From positions 169,378-233,377 of the IMG/VR virus record IMGVR_UViG_3300024239_000015: a stretch of DNA of 64,000 nucleotides; one strand, given 5' to 3'. The position numbers were made by a program, and so were the translations under genes. This document shows, piece by piece, positions 3,708-35,702 of the stretch (positions are counted from its first letter, which is position 1; each line of letters begins with the position of its first letter). The notes below the pieces were generated by a model, which saw only the letters and a program-made list of their open reading frames with translations, ran no database searches and was not told the DNA's origin.

Positions 3708-5635
3708 ATGGACGCTACCATGATTCTGGTGCAGGCTTTATCTCTAGCCTACTGGGAAAGCCGTTTACAACACACGTCCGGCGGGTCCATACAATTGCTT
3801 AGCAACGTGTTAGAAGAAGTCCCTATCCCAGATCAGAACATCGATGGGGATCGTACACGAGAGATCGTCGTGGGGTTACGTGGTTTAGTGCTGCAGTATA
3901 TCAACAAACCCGACCAAGGTGCGATGAACCTTGGTACACTCCTGCAACGAGTAAGGATTATCTGTCGTGATCAAAATTCGATCTACGACGCATTTGCTAA
4001 TGGTTTAGCAGATGGCTTAGAAGGCATTGAGATTCAAAAACGTTGCTTTTTATACGCACAGGAACTTTCTGACTTTGTGAACTTACGGAAGTTTCAAAAA
4101 CAAGTCAAAGGGTTCTACGCCAAACACGCGTACTCAGGCGAGCAGATCGACATCGCTTCAGCCGCAGCAGAAATGATCGAACAGTTAGAGCACTACGTGT
4201 ATCACCGCGAGGGAGCTTTAATAGACGGAATTTCAGGGATTGTCGACTATGTCGATATTTCTGACGAAGAGAAAATGCAGGACTTGTTTAAGAAAGCTCA
4301 GGAGGAGTCGTCTTCTGAGGGTATTCTGAAAGTAGGCTGGCAGGGGCTGACTCGGATGTTCGGTTGGCACGGCGGTCTGAGGCGAGGCGACTTTTACTTA
4401 ATCGGTGCGCTGCAACACAACTACAAATCAGGGATGGTTCTGAACCTCACTAAACAAGTTGCTTTGTATAACACACCGTACATGATCGACCCGAAGAAGA
4501 AGCCACTGATACTTGTTGTAGCCGCTGAAAACGCTACGACAGACAACATGACGTTTTTGTACTCTTCTTTAGTAGAGAATGAAACACAGCAACCAGCGGA
4601 CTTGACTAGGGTCTCCTACGAGGAGATGACGTCCTATGTGAAGCGACGTTTAGGCGTGAACGGATACCACTTCCACCACGTACGTGTAAACCCCTCTGAC
4701 TTTGGTTACCCAGAACTCTTTACGTTGATTCTGAAACTAGAAGCAGAAGGATACGAGATACACCTACTGACGATTGACTACCTGAACATGTTCAGTAAAA
4801 AAGGTTGTACGGCTGGTGCCCAAGGGCAAGACGTGCGTGACCTATTTAGACGTGTAAGAAACTTTTGTGCTCCTTAATTACAGGGCGTTAAAGCCGTAAG
4901 GTTTTAATGAAACCTCTCTGAACTGCTGGAAACCCCTAAAGCTGTTTCACCACTGCGAGGCGAAAGCCAAAGCCACGGTTTGAAAACGAAACGGATGTAC
5001 AATGGGCAACCGTGAGACCTAAGGTCTCCTGTAGCAGCCAAGTCCCCTCCCGTCCTTGAGACGCGGGGAAAGGTTCAACGACTATCCCGTAGCTGGGAGT
5101 AGGACTCAAGTGAGTCCCAAGTGGAGAGCTCCTCCTATTCTACTAAGAGTAGAGGATGAAATGATATAGTCTGTTCTGTAGGGAAAGCCTACAGCTGCGT
5201 ACCCACGCTGTGAAGCGTAAGACGCGGGAGAGGTCTCACGAACCTCTCCGAACATAAAAGAGAAGAATAGCGGTCATGACACCGGCTCAGATCAGCACAG
5301 AGGCGAAGTACTTGTTGAGGAATGGTGTAGATGACTTCGTGAAAGAAATCGCCAACAAAGGCTACTGGGACTCCTGTAAAACGATCGACCAAGAAGTCGA
5401 TATGGAAATGTTGATCCATATCGTGAAACTCGATGGTCGGAGTTACTTAACGGTACAACGTGGGAAACACCGTGGCTTAGGCACCCGCATGACACCTGAG
5501 ACAGATCTGTATACCGTACTTCCGTTTGAGCCTGTAGGTGGTATACGAGATGACATCCATGGTCGTGATACCAGTATGTCTCGTCCAGGGGGCGCTAACC
5601 TACACGGGGATGGCGGTGAGTGGTTTGCAGCATGA
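3708..5635 (+). CDS. dnaB: DnaB-like replicative helicase, two exons join(3708..4874,5261..5635), 513 aa spliced
   Basis: GGLRRGDFYLIGALQHNYKS (phiKZ-type variant Walker A), LLTIDYL (Walker B), QRGKHRG. Splicing gives RVRNFCAP|RRIAVMTPAQIS in frame. Confidence 0.88.
4875..5260 (+). mobile_element. Group I intron (IA-like, no homing endonuclease ORF), 386 nt
   Basis: P AACTGCTGGAAA (4921), Q AGCAGCC (5033), R GTTCAACGACTA (5073), S ATGATATAGTCT (5161). The 5' exon ends in U paired to G in P1 (GCTCCT/AGGGCG); terminal G at 5260; removal restores the frame. Confidence 0.9.
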
Positions 5636-6024
5636 TCGACTACTATCTGTGGGGGATACTCCTTAAAAGTATCCTCGTGCTTATCTATTACTGGAATAAA
5701 CACGAGCATCGAATTGCGTCAAGACAACTCAACGTCACAGGACACCTTACAGCGATTTGGTCAGCGTGTATCTTAGCGTATACGCTCTGTCGTCAAACCC
5801 CTGTGCTTTTAGAGCAGTGGTTATACGCCGTCGCTACTGTTGCGTTATTGGAGTTTATACTCTGGGTCCTTGAAGTACATTTCAAGCGAGTCTCTGTACT
5901 TAGAGGAAAACTTCTGTATAAAGAACACATGGACATCACCAAGGTCTTGCAAGGATTTGTACGCAGTAAAGCAATCTGGCTGTATTTACCCTACTGGAGT
6001 TTTTTACTCTGGTACAGCGCGTAA
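5632..6024 (+). CDS. Hypothetical membrane protein
   Basis: ATG overlaps the DnaB stop (ATGA); several hydrophobic segments. Confidence 0.6.
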   Translation: MIDYYLWGILLKSILVLIYYWNKHEHRIASRQLNVTGHLTAIWSACILAYTLCRQTPVLLEQWLYAVATVALLEFILWVLEVHFKRVSVLRGKLLYKEHMDITKVLQGFVRSKAIWLYLPYWSFLLWYSA

Positions 6025-33138: not shown

Positions 33139-35283
33139 ATGTCTGAACAACCAAAAAAAGAGATCAAAGGGATTGAATGCAAGCATGTCATTTACATGCC
33201 TTCGAACCGAGCGATGTCTTCTGATGATGCGGTGTTTATCAAAGAACGTATCCATTTTCAAGACGGAACACAAACCACCAACTTCCGTCAAGTGAATAAC
33301 CCACCGATGGATTTCTACGTGGTAAAACCTGCACTGCGCACCTACCGTGAGAAAAAGATCGCAGAACCTTTGAGTCGTTTACAGAAGTACACGACGACTC
33401 AACGCAAACTCCCTGAGAAGCTTTCTCAAGCGTTAGGGTTACGAGGCGGTAAAGACTTACCATTGCGACGTTTAGCGCGCTCTCCGTACGTGTATGGTGC
33501 CGATGCTACTGTTGCGACACGGATTAAAAAGAAATACCAAGAACGCTGGCCTGACGTATCCTCCAAGTCCACTTTAGCTGTACTCGACATAGAAACCGAC
33601 GTTGTGGACTCGGATGAATTTGGGGATATCATCGCAATCTCACTGACGTGTGGGAAACACGCCGTGTTAGTTGCTACAGAAAAGTTCTTAGAAGGAACTG
33701 TAGACGTTGAGCGTCGACTCTTTGCAGCGATTGATAAACACATCGGTGAAGACATCCGTCAGCGTGAGATCACCGTCGACTTTAAGGTCGTTGACTCTCC
33801 TGCGGCAGCAGTGAAATACGTCATGCAACGAGCGCATGAACTCGAACCTGACTTTATGGCGTGTTGGAACATCAACTTCGACTTACCTAAACTCATTGCT
33901 ACTGTACAGGAAGAAGGACTGGACGTTGGTCAGGTGTTCTGTGACCCTCGTGTTCCTTACGAATTCAGAAACCCACGGTATATCGAAGGGACTGAAAACA
34001 AAGTCACAAGCTCTGGGAAACAACAACCGTTGAGTCCCCATGAACGCTGGCACACTTTTGACGTCCCGTCTACGTTTTACTGGGTAGACGCCATGATCGT
34101 TTACGCGATGATTCGTAAAGCTGCAGGGATGGAATCCAGTTACAAACTCGATGACGTACTGGATAAAAACATCAAACGTCAGAAACTGAAATTCGATGGA
34201 GCGAAAGGGAAGTCTGGGAGAGAATGGCACTACGTCATGCAGACTCAATACAAAATTGAGTACTTGGTATATAACTTATTCGACTCCATCGGTGTAGAGC
34301 TTCTGGATGAGAAAACGATGGACTTGCAATTGACGTTACCTGAATTGGTAGGGTTTGGTGAGATCCACACGTTTAAGTCTACGCCTAAACAGTTAGCGGA
34401 TGACTTACACTTCTTCTGTTTAGAAAACCAGATGGTACTCTGTAGTATCTCTGACCAAATGCTAGACCCGTTAGACGAGTACGTGATCTCCCGTGAAGGG
34501 TGGATTATCACGCTTCCTTCACACCTAGTGGAGGAGAATGGGATTTTCGTATGCTCAGACTTTCCTGAGCTTCGGTCTCAAGCACGATGTTGGGTAAGCG
34601 ATTCTAGGTGTGTTACGACACACCGAGTCCCCTATTCTCGAAAGAGAGTGGGTGTAGGTTCTTTAATTGCTGGAATACACTAAAGCTCAAAACGCTACAA
34701 CGCAGTCCGTGAGGACAGACGTGAATGCCATCGAAAGATAGAAAAAAGTTTTGAGATAACCTAAGCTGAAATAAAAGCTTTGTTAGACGCAAGGTGCTAA
34801 GGGTTGTAAACAATGGTTAACCAGCAGCTGGGGTGGTTCTAAACCACCAGAGTTCAACGACTATCCCGTAGCGGGGAGTAGGGACGCAAGCGGAGTATAC
34901 ACTCAAGGCGTTTCGAAATAAGAACCCACCTAAACGCGTTTCTAACGCGCACGGTGAAGATATAGTCTGGGCGTGCAGGGAAAACCTGCAGCAGTGTGGG
35001 CAACCACGCGGAGAGTAAGTCGCGTTTACTCTTGAACAAACCGTTAGACGTAAAATCCTCTTATCCGTACACAGAGATCTTCTTAAACGTCTGTAAGTCA
35101 ACGACGTTGGTAGAAGTGTGTGAGATTGTAGGGGTGTCCGACCAAGACCGTCGGATATGTGGGATTAACATGACAGGTGGGATGACCAACGCGGTAGACT
35201 GGTGTTGTACGATGTATCAATTACCAAGGTTTGACGATGCATTAGAAGCGTACTTAGCTGAGCAAGAAAAGGAGGTCGCATGA
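33139..35283 (+). CDS. Split family-B DNA polymerase, exonuclease/motif-A subunit (phiKZ gp82-like), join(33139..34602,35044..35283), 567 aa spliced
   Basis: ExoI DIETD, ExoII WNINFDLP, ExoIII YNLFD; splicing restores PolB motif A WVSD|LDVKSSYP. Confidence 0.85.
34603..35043 (+). mobile_element. Group I intron (IA-like, no homing endonuclease ORF), 441 nt
   Basis: P AATTGCTGGAA (34665), Q AACCAGCAGC (34819), R GTTCAACGACTA (34852), S AAGATATAGTCT (34957). P1 GAU|UC pairs with GAGUC (U-G at the splice site); P10 UCUAG/UUAGA; terminal G at 35043. Confidence 0.92.
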
Positions 35284-35702
35284 GGCTGTCTGTGTTACTG
35301 ATCGCTCACCGTACGGTGACTGAGCCTAAACCTAAGCCGTTTCTTTATGGAACGGTGGAGGTGATATTCGACTCCATCGACCAGAAAGCGTACGAGTGGG
35401 TGTTACTAGAGCGTTTTGAGCACGGGTTTGCTGAGCTACGCATGCAGCTTGGGTTACTGGACTTACCACGCAAACACCAAGCGTTATTCGATAGCGTAAT
35501 AGACGATCTCACCAGTGCTAAACTCATCGCACTGGAAACCTTTCAACAAGCTCCTTCACTCACACGGCAAGTCCCTCATAAAGGACAACACGATCGTTTA
35601 CGGGAAGGAGTCGAAAGTCACGTGGAGTTTGAACCCATACGTCACACGTGGGGAGACCCCTCACACTTTGCAGTGACGTTGTTGGTGTTACCTAAAGACT
35701 AG
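35280..35702 (+). CDS. Hypothetical protein
   Basis: ATGA overlap with the polymerase stop; AGGAGG RBS. Confidence 0.65.
   Translation: MRLSVLLIAHRTVTEPKPKPFLYGTVEVIFDSIDQKAYEWVLLERFEHGFAELRMQLGLLDLPRKHQALFDSVIDDLTSAKLIALETFQQAPSLTRQVPHKGQHDRLREGVESHVEFEPIRHTWGDPSHFAVTLLVLPKD

What the first reader, a model, noticed from the sequence alone, without database searches (positions are those of the whole stretch)
34603..35043. Group I intron at the start of DNA polymerase motif A; unspliced mRNA encodes an exonuclease-only protein
Seen: P1 (GAU|UC:GAGUC, extended by GGTGTGT-TACG-ACACACC), P10 (UCUAG:UUAGA) and the full core. Splicing gives WVSD|LDVKSSYP, the PolB DxxSxYP motif. Unspliced, the frame runs 26 codons into the intron and yields a 514-aa protein with ExoI-III but no motif A. 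Inference: splicing efficiency could set the ratio of exonuclease-only to full subunit of an already split polymerase.
Basis: partly seen in the sequence, partly recalled or inferred. Interest (0 to 1): 0.6.

Follow-up and report, generated by a model that had tools for sequence, protein, structure and literature searches.

The report
Endonuclease-less intron in jumbo-phage DNA polymerase
A 441-base self-splicing (group I) intron with no homing-endonuclease gene interrupts the DNA polymerase N-terminal subunit gene of an uncultured phiKZ-like jumbo phage two codons before the catalytic aspartate; the intron is real but of a known kind, and nothing supports the idea that unspliced mRNA is used for regulation.

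Summary
Window 34603..35043 is a complete group I intron. It has a U·G pair at the 5' splice site, a terminal G, and helices P1-P9.2 including P7.1/P7.2 (subgroup IA type). Removing it joins two exons that match one phage DNA-polymerase profile at adjacent positions (494|495) and restores VSD|LDVKSSYP.

The host gene is the N-terminal subunit (DNAP-N) of the split B-family polymerase of phiKZ-like (chimallivirus) phages. About 64 of 78 related IMG/VR loci carry the two exons contiguously. Ten have insertions here or a few codons away, and eight of those were scanned and all match the Rfam group I model. Phage Goslar has an intron at exactly this site with an HNH endonuclease gene, already reported in a 2026 preprint. 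The window's copy has no endonuclease gene and no trace of one.

The 514-aa read-through ORF exists, but the regulatory idea is unsupported. Read-through tails range from 0 to 28 codons among 10 same-site introns. Eight of the 14 same-site introns examined start with an in-frame UAA.

A second, related intron splits the DnaB-like helicase gene at 4875..5260. Verdict: new member of a known kind.

The parts
33139..34602 (+). Exon 1 of the DNA polymerase N-terminal subunit gene (DNAP-N): 488 codons covering the N-terminal and 3'-5' exonuclease domains (Exo I D150/E152, Exo II N244/D248, Exo III Y378/D382). It ends in GAT (Asp488).
   Evidence: PHROG 3011 'DNA polymerase' E 1e-159, profile positions 5-494. 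tblastn finds 306 phiKZ-like phage records. Invariant residues are listed.
34603..35043 (+). Group I intron, 441 nt, subgroup IA type (P7.1/P7.2 present), with no internal ORF for a homing endonuclease.
   Evidence: Rfam RF00028 over the full model, 34.4 bits, E 4.8e-5 for the window. MFE z-score -4.4. Covariation with same-site introns. No HEG homolog in the intron or the window.
34600..34629 (+). P1. Exon GAU (34600-34602) plus intron UC (34603-34604) pair with the internal guide GAGUC (34625-34629), with U34602·G34625 at the splice site. A UA bulge follows, then a 7-bp P1 extension GGUGUGU/ACACACC (34607-34624) capped by a UACG tetraloop. This occupies the position where relatives carry the HNH ORF.
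   Evidence: Read from the sequence and formed in the MFE fold. GUC opposite the exon's GAU is conserved in 10 same-site introns. L084 has an analogous hairpin with a different sequence.
34630..34652 (+). P2 hairpin (CCC..UCUC GAAA GAGA..GGG) with a GNRA loop.
   Evidence: Compensatory changes occur in relatives (columns 9-30).
34657..34663 (+). P3 5' strand GGUUCUU. It pairs with AAGAACC at 34920-34926.
   Evidence: It covaries across introns: Goslar CUCUCUUU/AAAGGGAG, L081 AUUAUUU/AAAUGGU, L017 CCCAUC/GGUGGG.
34668..34826 (+). P4-P6 domain. P4 is UGCUGG (34668-34673) paired with CCAGCA (34821-34826). It encloses P5 and a ~145-nt P5 extension (34674-34820).
   Evidence: This stretch is 70-77% identical to introns of Brochothrix, Enterococcus, Staphylococcus and Listeria phages and of Goslar.
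34832..34848 (+). P6 hairpin GGUGGUU-CUA-AACCACC.
34859..34864 (+). P7 5' strand GACUAU (guanosine-binding helix). It pairs with AUAGUC at 34962-34967. It is flanked by the consensus J6/7 GUUCAAC and J8/7 GAAGAU.
   Evidence: Rfam alignment. Pair counts columns 317-321/439-443 and.
34865..34911 (+). P7.1 (CCCG-UAG-CGGG, 34865-34875) and P7.2 (34884-34911), inserted between P7 and the P3 3' strand.
   Evidence: P7.1/P7.2 is the hallmark of subgroup IA (my knowledge of the Michel-Westhof classification).
34920..34926 (+). P3 3' strand AAGAACC.
34927..34956 (+). P8 hairpin.
34962..34967 (+). P7 3' strand AUAGUC.
34974..35043 (+). P9 (34974-34990), P9.1 with a GCAA loop (34994-35009), P9.2 (35012-35032), then the tail UGAACAAACC and the terminal guanosine G35043.
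   Evidence: The GAACAA..G tail recurs in relatives.
35044..35283 (+). Exon 2 of DNAP-N: 79 codons plus the stop codon. It begins L489-D490-V-K-S-S-Y-P (motif A; D490 is the predicted catalytic Asp). It continues into the C-terminal segment equivalent to the PhiKZ DNAP-N palm-insertion piece.
   Evidence: PHROG 3011 positions 495-572, E 8e-22. tblastn finds 267 phage records. The PhiKZ structure is described in PMC13648687.
34603..34683 (+). In-frame read-through of unspliced RNA: 26 codons (SRCVTTHRVPYSRKRVGVGSLIAGIH) and TAA at 34681-34683. A ribosome reading it would cross P1, P2 and the 5' strands of P3, P4 and P5.
   Evidence: The tail is not conserved in same-site introns.

Best explanation
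Window 34603..35043 is a self-splicing group I intron of subgroup IA type that has no homing-endonuclease gene. It sits in the gene for DNAP-N, the exonuclease-plus-motif-A subunit of the split B-family replicase of a phiKZ-like jumbo phage.

Shown:
- The RNA has every element of the group I core.
- The exon's GAU pairs with the guide GUC, giving the U·G wobble at the 5' splice site.
- The intron ends in G.
- Removing it restores a continuous, conserved DNAP-N reading frame (VSD|LDVKSSYP), two codons upstream of the catalytic Asp.

Inferred mechanism: exogenous guanosine bound in P7 attacks after U34602. The freed 5' exon, held on the guide, then attacks after G35043 and ligates the exons. The result is a 567-aa DNAP-N that assembles with DNAP-C, which is encoded outside the window.

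The intron belongs to a lineage that occupies this exact site in many chimalliviruses. In about half of the copies examined, an HNH/NUMOD homing endonuclease sits in the P1 loop. In this phage that loop is reduced to a 7-bp hairpin. The copy is therefore a streamlined, immobile derivative, kept because imprecise loss would destroy the active site.

The 514-aa protein from unspliced RNA is most likely an unselected by-product.
For: Rfam full-length match. The MFE fold reproduces the group I architecture, z = -4.4. Exon 1 and exon 2 map to adjacent PHROG 3011 positions 494|495. The closest intron-less homolog, P0002 (68% identity), reads ...HVADLDVKSSYPYTEIF... across the junction.

About 64 of 78 IMG/VR relatives have a 0-nt gap between the exon homologs. 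Ten have insertions at or near the site. Eight of these were scanned and all match RF00028, and five of the matches, in four loci, exceed the curated cut-off.

Goslar has an intron at the identical junction, 81186|82949, stated independently in bioRxiv 10.64898/2026.10.01.755736.

Covariation supports the fold: 41 of 79 predicted pairs show double compensatory changes among 5 same-site introns, and 16 of 19 among 11 introns. P3, P2, P8 and P9 keep pairing with different sequences.

The endonuclease ORFs of six same-site introns are mutually homologous (E 1e-28 to 1e-88), and none has a homolog in the window. Two independent metagenome assemblies carry the identical sequence.
Against: The Rfam score (34.4 bits) is below the curated threshold of 50, so the default scan reports nothing. 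No RNA data exist for this uncultured phage, so splicing is inferred and not observed. P1 has only 3 exon-side base pairs, and the canonical P10 is only 2 bp. For phiKZ itself, predicted intron endonuclease loci showed no splicing in long-read transcriptomes (PMC10914365), so prediction is not proof in this phage group. Whether this phage forms a phage nucleus was not verified within the window.
Confidence: 0.88

Rival explanations
1. Splicing is deliberately incomplete. The ratio of spliced to unspliced mRNA sets the ratio of full DNAP-N to a 514-aa exonuclease-only protein, which tunes replication or proofreading.
For: The 514-aa ORF exists, and exon 1 holds all exonuclease residues. Unlike most same-site introns, this one lacks an early in-frame stop. 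There is general precedent: T4 intron splicing varies with translation and growth state (Sandegren and Sjoberg 2007, cited in PMC10914365).
Against: The tails of same-site introns are 0-28 codons long with no conserved peptide, and 8 of 14 start with UAA. Similarity between the two long tails is confined to the translated P3-P4 RNA consensus. The truncated product lacks catalytic Asp490 and the ~50-residue segment that in PhiKZ builds the inter-subunit palm-insertion domain. In nucleus-forming phages transcription is separated from translation (PMC12908238), so unspliced RNA would first have to be exported. Only identical copies of this phage exist, so no signal of selection on the tail can be measured.
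Confidence: 0.05
2. The intron is a splicing-dead relic and the polymerase is made in three pieces. Exon 1 is translated as the 514-aa protein. Exon 2 is translated separately from the internal GTG at 34996 (95-aa ORF 34996..35283).
For: An ORF 34996..35283 in the exon-2 frame exists. The polymerase family already tolerates one split.
Against: All catalytic-core elements and consensus junction sequences are intact, and the paired elements are stable. The GTG lies inside the P9.1 helix and no ribosome-binding site was sought. Relatives with 0-codon tails and with endonuclease ORFs show that the lineage is a working intron. A separate 9-kDa motif-A peptide has no precedent in the family.
Confidence: 0.03
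3. This is a sub-hypothesis about the 3' splice site. The bases at the very 5' end of the intron (UCUAG) are a real, non-canonical guide for the 3' exon. They would act either as the reader drew it or as a composite guide, UCU^[hairpin]^GA, next to GUC.
For: The window has 5 bp of complementarity. L085 has 8 bp (ACGUCUAG: UUAGACGU). L084 carries ACGUCUAA, the exact reverse complement of UUAGACGU. The chance of 5 bp or more in the search space used is about 7.5% per intron.
Against: Goslar, L017, L081 and L086 show no such pairing (0 bp) and L020 and L049 only 3 bp. L049, L020 and L093 instead have canonical guides 5' of GUC, with 6, 4 and 4 bp. The three positive introns may share ancestry and so are not independent. 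L084's exon 2 was not recovered.
Confidence: 0.15

Closest known systems
Escherichia phage Goslar gp068 (DNAP-N) intron carrying the HNH/NUMOD homing endonuclease gp069 (bioRxiv 10.64898/2026.10.01.755736, methods; NC_048170 81187..82948)
   Same: It has the identical insertion site (after the Asp codon GAT, before Leu-Asp of motif A) in the same host gene. It shares the GUC guide, the P2-P9 architecture and the sequence-related P3-P5 region (73% identity over 133 nt).
   Different: Goslar's intron is 1762 nt, with a 396-aa endonuclease ORF in the P1 loop and an in-frame UAA as its first codon. The window's intron is 441 nt and ORF-less, with a 7-bp hairpin in that position and a 26-codon read-through. 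The host proteins are only about 37% identical.
PhiPA3 gp210 intron in the virion RNA polymerase gene (Birkholz et al. 2024, PMC11620839) and the PhiPA3 intron splitting the DnaB-like helicase gene (gp134 / endonuclease gp133 / gp131)
   Same: These are group I introns in essential nucleic-acid enzymes of chimalliviruses, inserted next to catalytic residues. The PhiPA3 helicase intron shares a 91% identical P7-P7.1/J8/7 core with the window intron.
   Different: They sit in different host genes and carry endonucleases. For gp210 an interference-competition role was shown experimentally. No endonuclease is present here, so that role is excluded for this copy.
Group I introns in phage DNA polymerase genes: SPO1/SP82 (I-HmuI), Bastille (I-BasI), LUZ24, Pf-WMP3 (cited in PMC11620839, PMC12908238, PMC10914365)
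   Same: They are self-splicing introns in a phage replicative polymerase gene at conserved motifs. Several carry HNH nicking endonucleases.
   Different: The polymerase families, insertion sites and phage lineages differ. Those polymerases are single-chain, whereas here the host gene is one subunit of a split PolB.
T4 td / nrdB / sunY and Twort-like (Herelleviridae) subgroup IA2 introns
   Same: They share the IA-type architecture with P7.1/P7.2. The window's P4-P6 extension is 70-77% identical to introns of Brochothrix A9 (in its ribonucleotide reductase gene), Enterococcus, Staphylococcus and Listeria phages.
   Different: The hosts are phages of Gram-positive bacteria or T-even phages, and the genes differ. 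Splicing of the T4 introns is coupled to translation (Sandegren and Sjoberg 2007), which should not apply if this phage transcribes inside a phage nucleus.

Membership tests
Group I intron (Rfam RF00028) | Conserved core P3-P9 with consensus J3/4, J6/7 and J8/7, scored by the family covariance model | tested here: met
   The model aligns over its full length (1-253), E 4.8e-5 for the whole window. Caveat: 34.4 bits is below the curated gathering score of 50, because of the ~145-nt P5 extension and P7.1/P7.2. Same-site homologs score 57-92 bits.
Group I intron (Rfam RF00028) | P1 with a U·G wobble pair at the 5' splice site | tested here: met
   U34602·G34625 lies within GAU|UC: GAGUC. GUC opposite the exon's GAU is conserved in 10 same-site introns.
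Group I intron (Rfam RF00028) | Terminal guanosine (omega-G) at the 3' splice site | tested here: met
   The intron ends in G35043. All 10 same-site introns with a recovered 3' end also end in G.
Group I intron (Rfam RF00028) | P3/P7 pseudoknot with the guanosine-binding P7 helix | tested here: met
   P7 is GACUAU/AUAGUC and P3 is GGUUCUU/AAGAACC. P3 covaries across introns. P7 pairs are kept 5 of 5, with one compensatory change.
Group I intron (Rfam RF00028) | Excision restores the host reading frame exactly | tested here: met
   PHROG 3011 positions 494|495. Intron-less relatives are contiguous at this point.
Group I intron (Rfam RF00028) | Canonical P10 (3' exon paired with guide bases 5' of the P1 strand) | tested here: inconclusive
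   Only 2 bp (UU/GA) form here. Relatives L049, L020 and L093 have 6, 4 and 4 bp. P10 is dispensable in many group I introns (my knowledge).
Group I intron (Rfam RF00028) | Guanosine-dependent self-splicing activity | not testable with these tools
   This needs in-vitro transcription and splicing, or RNA from infected cells.
Subgroup IA (IA2-like) group I introns | Extra helices P7.1 and P7.2 between P7 and the 3' strand of P3 | tested here: met
   P7.1 at 34865-34875 and P7.2 at 34884-34911 form in the MFE fold and in the alignment fold.
Mobile (homing) group I intron | Intron-encoded homing endonuclease | tested here: not met
   No plus-strand ORF in the intron apart from the read-through tail and the exon-2-frame ORF from GTG 34996. 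Six related HNH endonucleases give no tblastn hit in the intron or the window (best E 0.19).
Chimallivirus split DNA polymerase, DNAP-N subunit | Homology to the DNAP-N family, with the exonuclease residues and motif A and a C-terminus about 77 residues after the motif A Asp | tested here: met
   PHROG 3011 E 1e-159. There are 306 phiKZ-like phage hits. D150/E152/D248/D382 are invariant. D490 lies 77 residues from the end, against 76 for PhiKZ D562 of 638.
Chimallivirus split DNA polymerase, DNAP-N subunit | Separate DNAP-C gene (motifs B and C, fingers, thumb) in the same genome | not tested
   No motif B or motif C pattern occurs anywhere in the 64-kb window. The rest of the 233-kb contig was not available.

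The most novel reading that the evidence does not exclude
This phage probably transcribes in a ribosome-free compartment, as nucleus-forming chimalliviruses do, and its intron has lost the early in-frame stop that most same-site introns keep. Export of unspliced DNAP-N mRNA could then yield a 514-aa exonuclease-only protein that cannot dock to DNAP-C. Splicing efficiency would act as a switch on replication or on nuclease activity. A linked possibility is that the bases at the intron's 5' end form a new kind of 3'-exon guide (seen at 5-8 bp in the window and L085, and in L084 if its unrecovered exon 2 begins UUAGACGU).
Probability: 0.05. Interest if true: 0.65.

Novelty: new member of a known kind. 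Interest (0 to 1): 0.3.

Why it matters
For annotation: gene callers truncate DNAP-N at or just after the splice site, as in the Goslar RefSeq record and in about one in five metagenomic homologs. The catalytic motif A of the replicase is then missed, and the default Rfam threshold does not flag this intron.

For biology: the few codons around motif A of the chimallivirus DNAP-N gene are a hot spot for group I introns. There are at least three or four insertion sites, and copies occur with and without the endonuclease. This gives a natural series for studying the invasion, endonuclease-loss and streamlining cycle in phages whose genomes are physically isolated in a phage nucleus.

This phage carries two sibling endonuclease-less introns in two replisome genes, the helicase and the polymerase. 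The proposed regulatory use of unspliced mRNA would be interesting, but it has no support.

Tried and rejected
- The default Rfam gathering scan of the window found nothing. The intron appears only with the E-value threshold.
- Megablast of the gene against 50,697 phage records gave no match. The phage is uncultured and is known only from two IMG/VR contigs.
- A family profile (A2) searched against PDB sequences gave no hit at E <= 1e-3. Structural statements therefore rest on the PhiKZ cryo-EM preprint, not on my own comparison.
- Pfam found nothing for either exon. PHROGs did.
- A covariance model of the whole intron, which would have allowed count of structure pairs with a stored structure, was not built. 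The intron exceeds the size and calibration limits. I avoided typing a structure string of more than 500 characters and used RNAalifold plus per-helix scripts instead. MAFFT misaligns the variable helices, so column-based counts for P3, P6, P8 and P9.1 are underestimates.
- A predicted complex of the exon-2 peptide with DNAP-C was not run. DNAP-C is outside the window, and spliced exons cannot be passed by reference.
- I searched for endonuclease remnants in the intron and for a free-standing homolog in the window, with negative results.
- I considered and rejected an assembly artefact (identical in two assemblies) and an intein or frameshift (the insert is RNA-structured and has stops in frame).
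- The two-piece tblastn hits in PA7-like Pseudomonas phages are not introns. They most likely reflect the 'little finger' protein insertion described for PhiKZ; I did not inspect those loci.
Full report
**What is in the sequence**

The + strand ORF 33139..34683 (514 aa) and the 79-codon stretch 35044..35283 are separated by 441 nt. Exon 1 ends in GAT (Asp488, T34602). The insert ends in G35043. Exon 2 begins TTA GAC GTA AAA TCC TCT TAT CCG, which reads LDVKSSYP.

PHROG 3011 ('DNA polymerase', 576 positions) matches the first piece at profile positions 5-494 (E 1e-159). It matches the second piece at positions 495-572 (E 8e-22). So the two pieces are adjacent parts of one protein, and the junction is exact to the codon.

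**Is it a group I intron?**

Rfam RF00028 aligns over its whole length to 34602..34991. The score is 34.4 bits, E 8e-7 in a local scan and 4.8e-5 for the whole window. This is below the curated 50-bit cut-off, which is why the default scan was blank. The deficit comes from a ~145-nt extension of P5 and from P7.1/P7.2.

An unconstrained MFE fold of 34597-35049 reproduces the group I layout by itself:
- P1 (GAU|UC : GAGUC, with U34602·G34625) plus a 7-bp extension capped by UACG
- P2 with a GAAA loop
- P3 (GGUUCUU/AAGAACC)
- P4 (UGCUGG/CCAGCA) enclosing P5 and its extension
- P6, P7.1, P7.2, P8, P9, P9.1 (GCAA loop) and P9.2

The z-score is -4.4, and 0 of 100 shuffles fold as well. P7 (GACUAU/AUAGUC) forms the pseudoknot with P3. 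P7.1/P7.2 place the intron in subgroup IA, like nearly all phage introns (my knowledge of the classification).

**What gene is interrupted?**

tblastn of exon 1 finds 306 phage records, all phiKZ-like jumbo phages, at 36-41% identity. The window also encodes phiKZ-type internal head proteins, a tail tube protein, the major head protein, a DnaB-like helicase and a phiKZ-type RNA polymerase beta subunit.

Two 2026 preprints show that chimalliviruses make a split B-family polymerase. DNAP-N carries the N-terminal domain, the exonuclease, part of the palm and motif A. DNAP-C carries the rest. A third protein, Rhc, completes the complex (PMC13648687; 10.64898/2026.10.01.755736). So 'already split polymerase' is right. 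No motif B or C pattern exists in the window, so DNAP-C lies elsewhere on the 233-kb contig.

In PhiKZ the motif A Asp is D562 of 638 residues. Here D490 is 77 residues from the C-terminus. The intron therefore sits two codons upstream of the catalytic Asp. All four exonuclease acidic residues (D150, E152, D248, D382) are in exon 1.

**Relatives with and without the intron**

The window is identical to two IMG/VR contigs from two metagenomes, so this is not an assembly artefact. The nearest homologs (P0002-P0004, 66-68% identity) are uninterrupted and read ...HVADLDVKSSYPYTEIF... across the junction.

I compared 78 other IMG/VR chimallivirus loci. About 64 have the exon homologs directly abutting. 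Ten have insertions at this site or a few codons away. Eight of those ten were scanned, and all match RF00028. Five of the matches, in four loci (L051, L049, L061, L017), score 57-92 bits, above the curated cut-off.

Among the 120 best protein homologs, about 23 are gene calls truncated at one of these positions:
- at the splice-site Asp
- two codons later (ADLD|)
- about five codons later
- about 32 codons earlier

Goslar has a 1762-nt intron at exactly this junction (81186|82949), with the NUMOD1/HNH_3 gene gp069 inside. The Goslar preprint states the same coordinates in its methods. The site and the phenomenon are therefore already on record for one cultured phage.

**Comparative support for the fold**

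I collected 14 introns at this exact site: the window, Goslar, L017, L020, L049, L081, L084-L087 and L090-L093. All 10 whose guide region was located keep GUC opposite the exon's GAU. L092 and L093 show the same GUC in the printed sequence.

RNAalifold on five of them gives 79 pairs, 41 with compensatory double changes. On the 3' domain of 11 related introns (ten same-site introns plus the window's helicase intron), 16 of 19 pairs show such changes. A per-intron helix table shows P2, P3, P6, P8, P9, P9.1 and P9.2 maintained with different sequences.

**Endonuclease status**

Eight of the 14 carry an ORF in the P1 loop. The six I compared are homologous to each other (26-39% identity, E 1e-28 to 1e-88). 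Six of the 14 are ORF-less.

In the window the P1 loop is a clean 7-bp hairpin. None of the endonucleases has any tblastn match in the intron or elsewhere in the window. This copy is a streamlined, non-mobile derivative of a homing intron lineage. The direction of change is an inference, and an ancestrally ORF-less state is not excluded.

The read-through ORF is real, but comparison gives it no support. Tails of the 10 same-site introns with a readable 5' end are 0, 0, 0, 0, 2, 7, 10, 12, 26 and 28 codons. The four added later all begin with UAA too, so 8 of 14 start GAU|UAAC.

The two long tails (window and L084) resemble each other only in SLIAG/SLTAG. That is the translation of the conserved P3-J3/4-P4 RNA (UUUAAUUGCUGG).

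The truncated protein would lack Asp490. It would also lack the last ~50 residues, which in PhiKZ DNAP-N (589-638) fold with DNAP-C into the palm-insertion domain of an 'extensively interdigitated' interface. It is therefore unlikely to be an alternative subunit.

Chimalliviruses strictly uncouple transcription from translation (PMC12908238). If this phage does so too, splicing precedes ribosome access. That would explain why a 26-codon path through P1-P5 is tolerated, and it means unspliced RNA would have to be exported to be translated. This step is inference.

General precedent for condition-dependent phage intron splicing exists (Sandegren and Sjoberg 2007, cited). I therefore leave the idea at about 5%.

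**P10**

A canonical P10 pairs the 3' exon with guide bases just 5' of GUC. Here that is 2 bp (UU/GA). L049, L020 and L093 have 6, 4 and 4 bp.

By chance such a match (5 bp or more in the registers I allowed) occurs about 7.5% of the time. However, L085 has 8 bp of the same kind (ACGUCUAG: UUAGACGU). L084 carries ACGUCUAA, the exact reverse complement of UUAGACGU. Goslar, L017, L081 and L086 have none, and L020 and L049 have at most 3 bp.

I cannot tell whether this is a shared-ancestry footprint or a real non-canonical guide. A composite guide, UCU^hairpin^GA next to GUC, is geometrically possible in the window. It is recorded as unexplained.

**Comparison and verdict**

This is a group I intron of a familiar phage type in a familiar kind of target: a replicative polymerase, next to a catalytic residue. 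Its site has already been noted for Goslar. It is a new, endonuclease-less member in an uncultured phage.

What the survey adds:
- This short stretch of DNAP-N is an intron hot spot across chimalliviruses.
- Standard annotation and default Rfam thresholds miss it.
- The same window holds a sibling intron in the helicase gene.

Noticed in passing
window 4875..5260 (+); exons 3708..4874 and 5261..5635: A second ORF-less group I intron (Rfam 47.2 bits, E 7e-9, again below the gathering score) splits the DnaB-like replicative helicase gene. PHROG 3213 matches exon 1 at positions 1-384 and exon 2 at 386-506. Its P7-P7.1 core is nearly identical to that of the polymerase intron. PhiPA3 has the same gene split by an insert holding a putative endonuclease (gp134/gp133/gp131).
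   Followed up: partly
L085:4455-4462 and L084:4443-4450, compared with window 34603-34607: In two related same-site introns, intron nt 3-10 are an 8-nt complement of the 3' exon start UUAGACGU. The window has 5 nt of it. Other same-site introns lack it or have a canonical guide instead. This could be a non-canonical 3'-exon guide or a shared-ancestry footprint.
   Followed up: partly
window 34783..34789: The loop of a peripheral hairpin in the P5 extension reads UUAGACG, identical to the first 7 nt of exon 2 and complementary to the intron's 5' UCUAG. About 0.03 such matches are expected by chance in 441 nt. The hairpin is not conserved in relatives.
   Followed up: no
L017 (IMGVR_UViG_3300024239_000014) and L020 (IMGVR_UViG_3300024308_000021): The two metagenomes that hold this phage each hold another, distantly related chimallivirus (39-41% DNAP-N identity). 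Each of those has its own ORF-less intron (297 and 430 nt) at the same site, although only about 13% of IMG/VR relatives are interrupted here.
   Followed up: partly
L051:4855-5206 and 5360-5693; L061, L042/L043; proteins P0037, P0039, P0045, P0074, P0069, P0073, P0098, P0100: At least three further insertion sites cluster around motif A of DNAP-N: about 32 codons upstream, after ADLD, and after ADLDV-x-x. L051 carries two strong group I introns (92 and 87 bits) within 850 nt.
   Followed up: partly
window 34661..34880, compared with Brochothrix phage A9 NC_015253 85172..85386 and with Enterococcus, Staphylococcus and Listeria phages: The intron's P4-P6 domain is 70-77% identical to introns of Herelleviridae of Gram-positive hosts. 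In phage A9 the matching intron lies between two ribonucleotide reductase gene pieces. This points to one widely dispersed intron family.
   Followed up: partly
L001 (Goslar NC_048170) 82949..83203: Exon 2 of Goslar DNAP-N has no annotated feature in RefSeq, and gp068 is annotated as ending at 81189. My independent junction equals the one given in the 2026 preprint.
   Followed up: yes
window 35280..35702 (+): A 140-aa ORF overlaps the DNAP-N stop codon (ATGA). It has no Pfam or PHROG match.
   Followed up: no
L085 / P0005 and P0006: P0005 (uninterrupted, 562 aa) and P0006 (interrupted by an endonuclease-bearing intron) are about 90% identical over the last 120 exon-1 residues. They form a close intron-plus / intron-minus pair, useful for dating gain or loss.
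   Followed up: no
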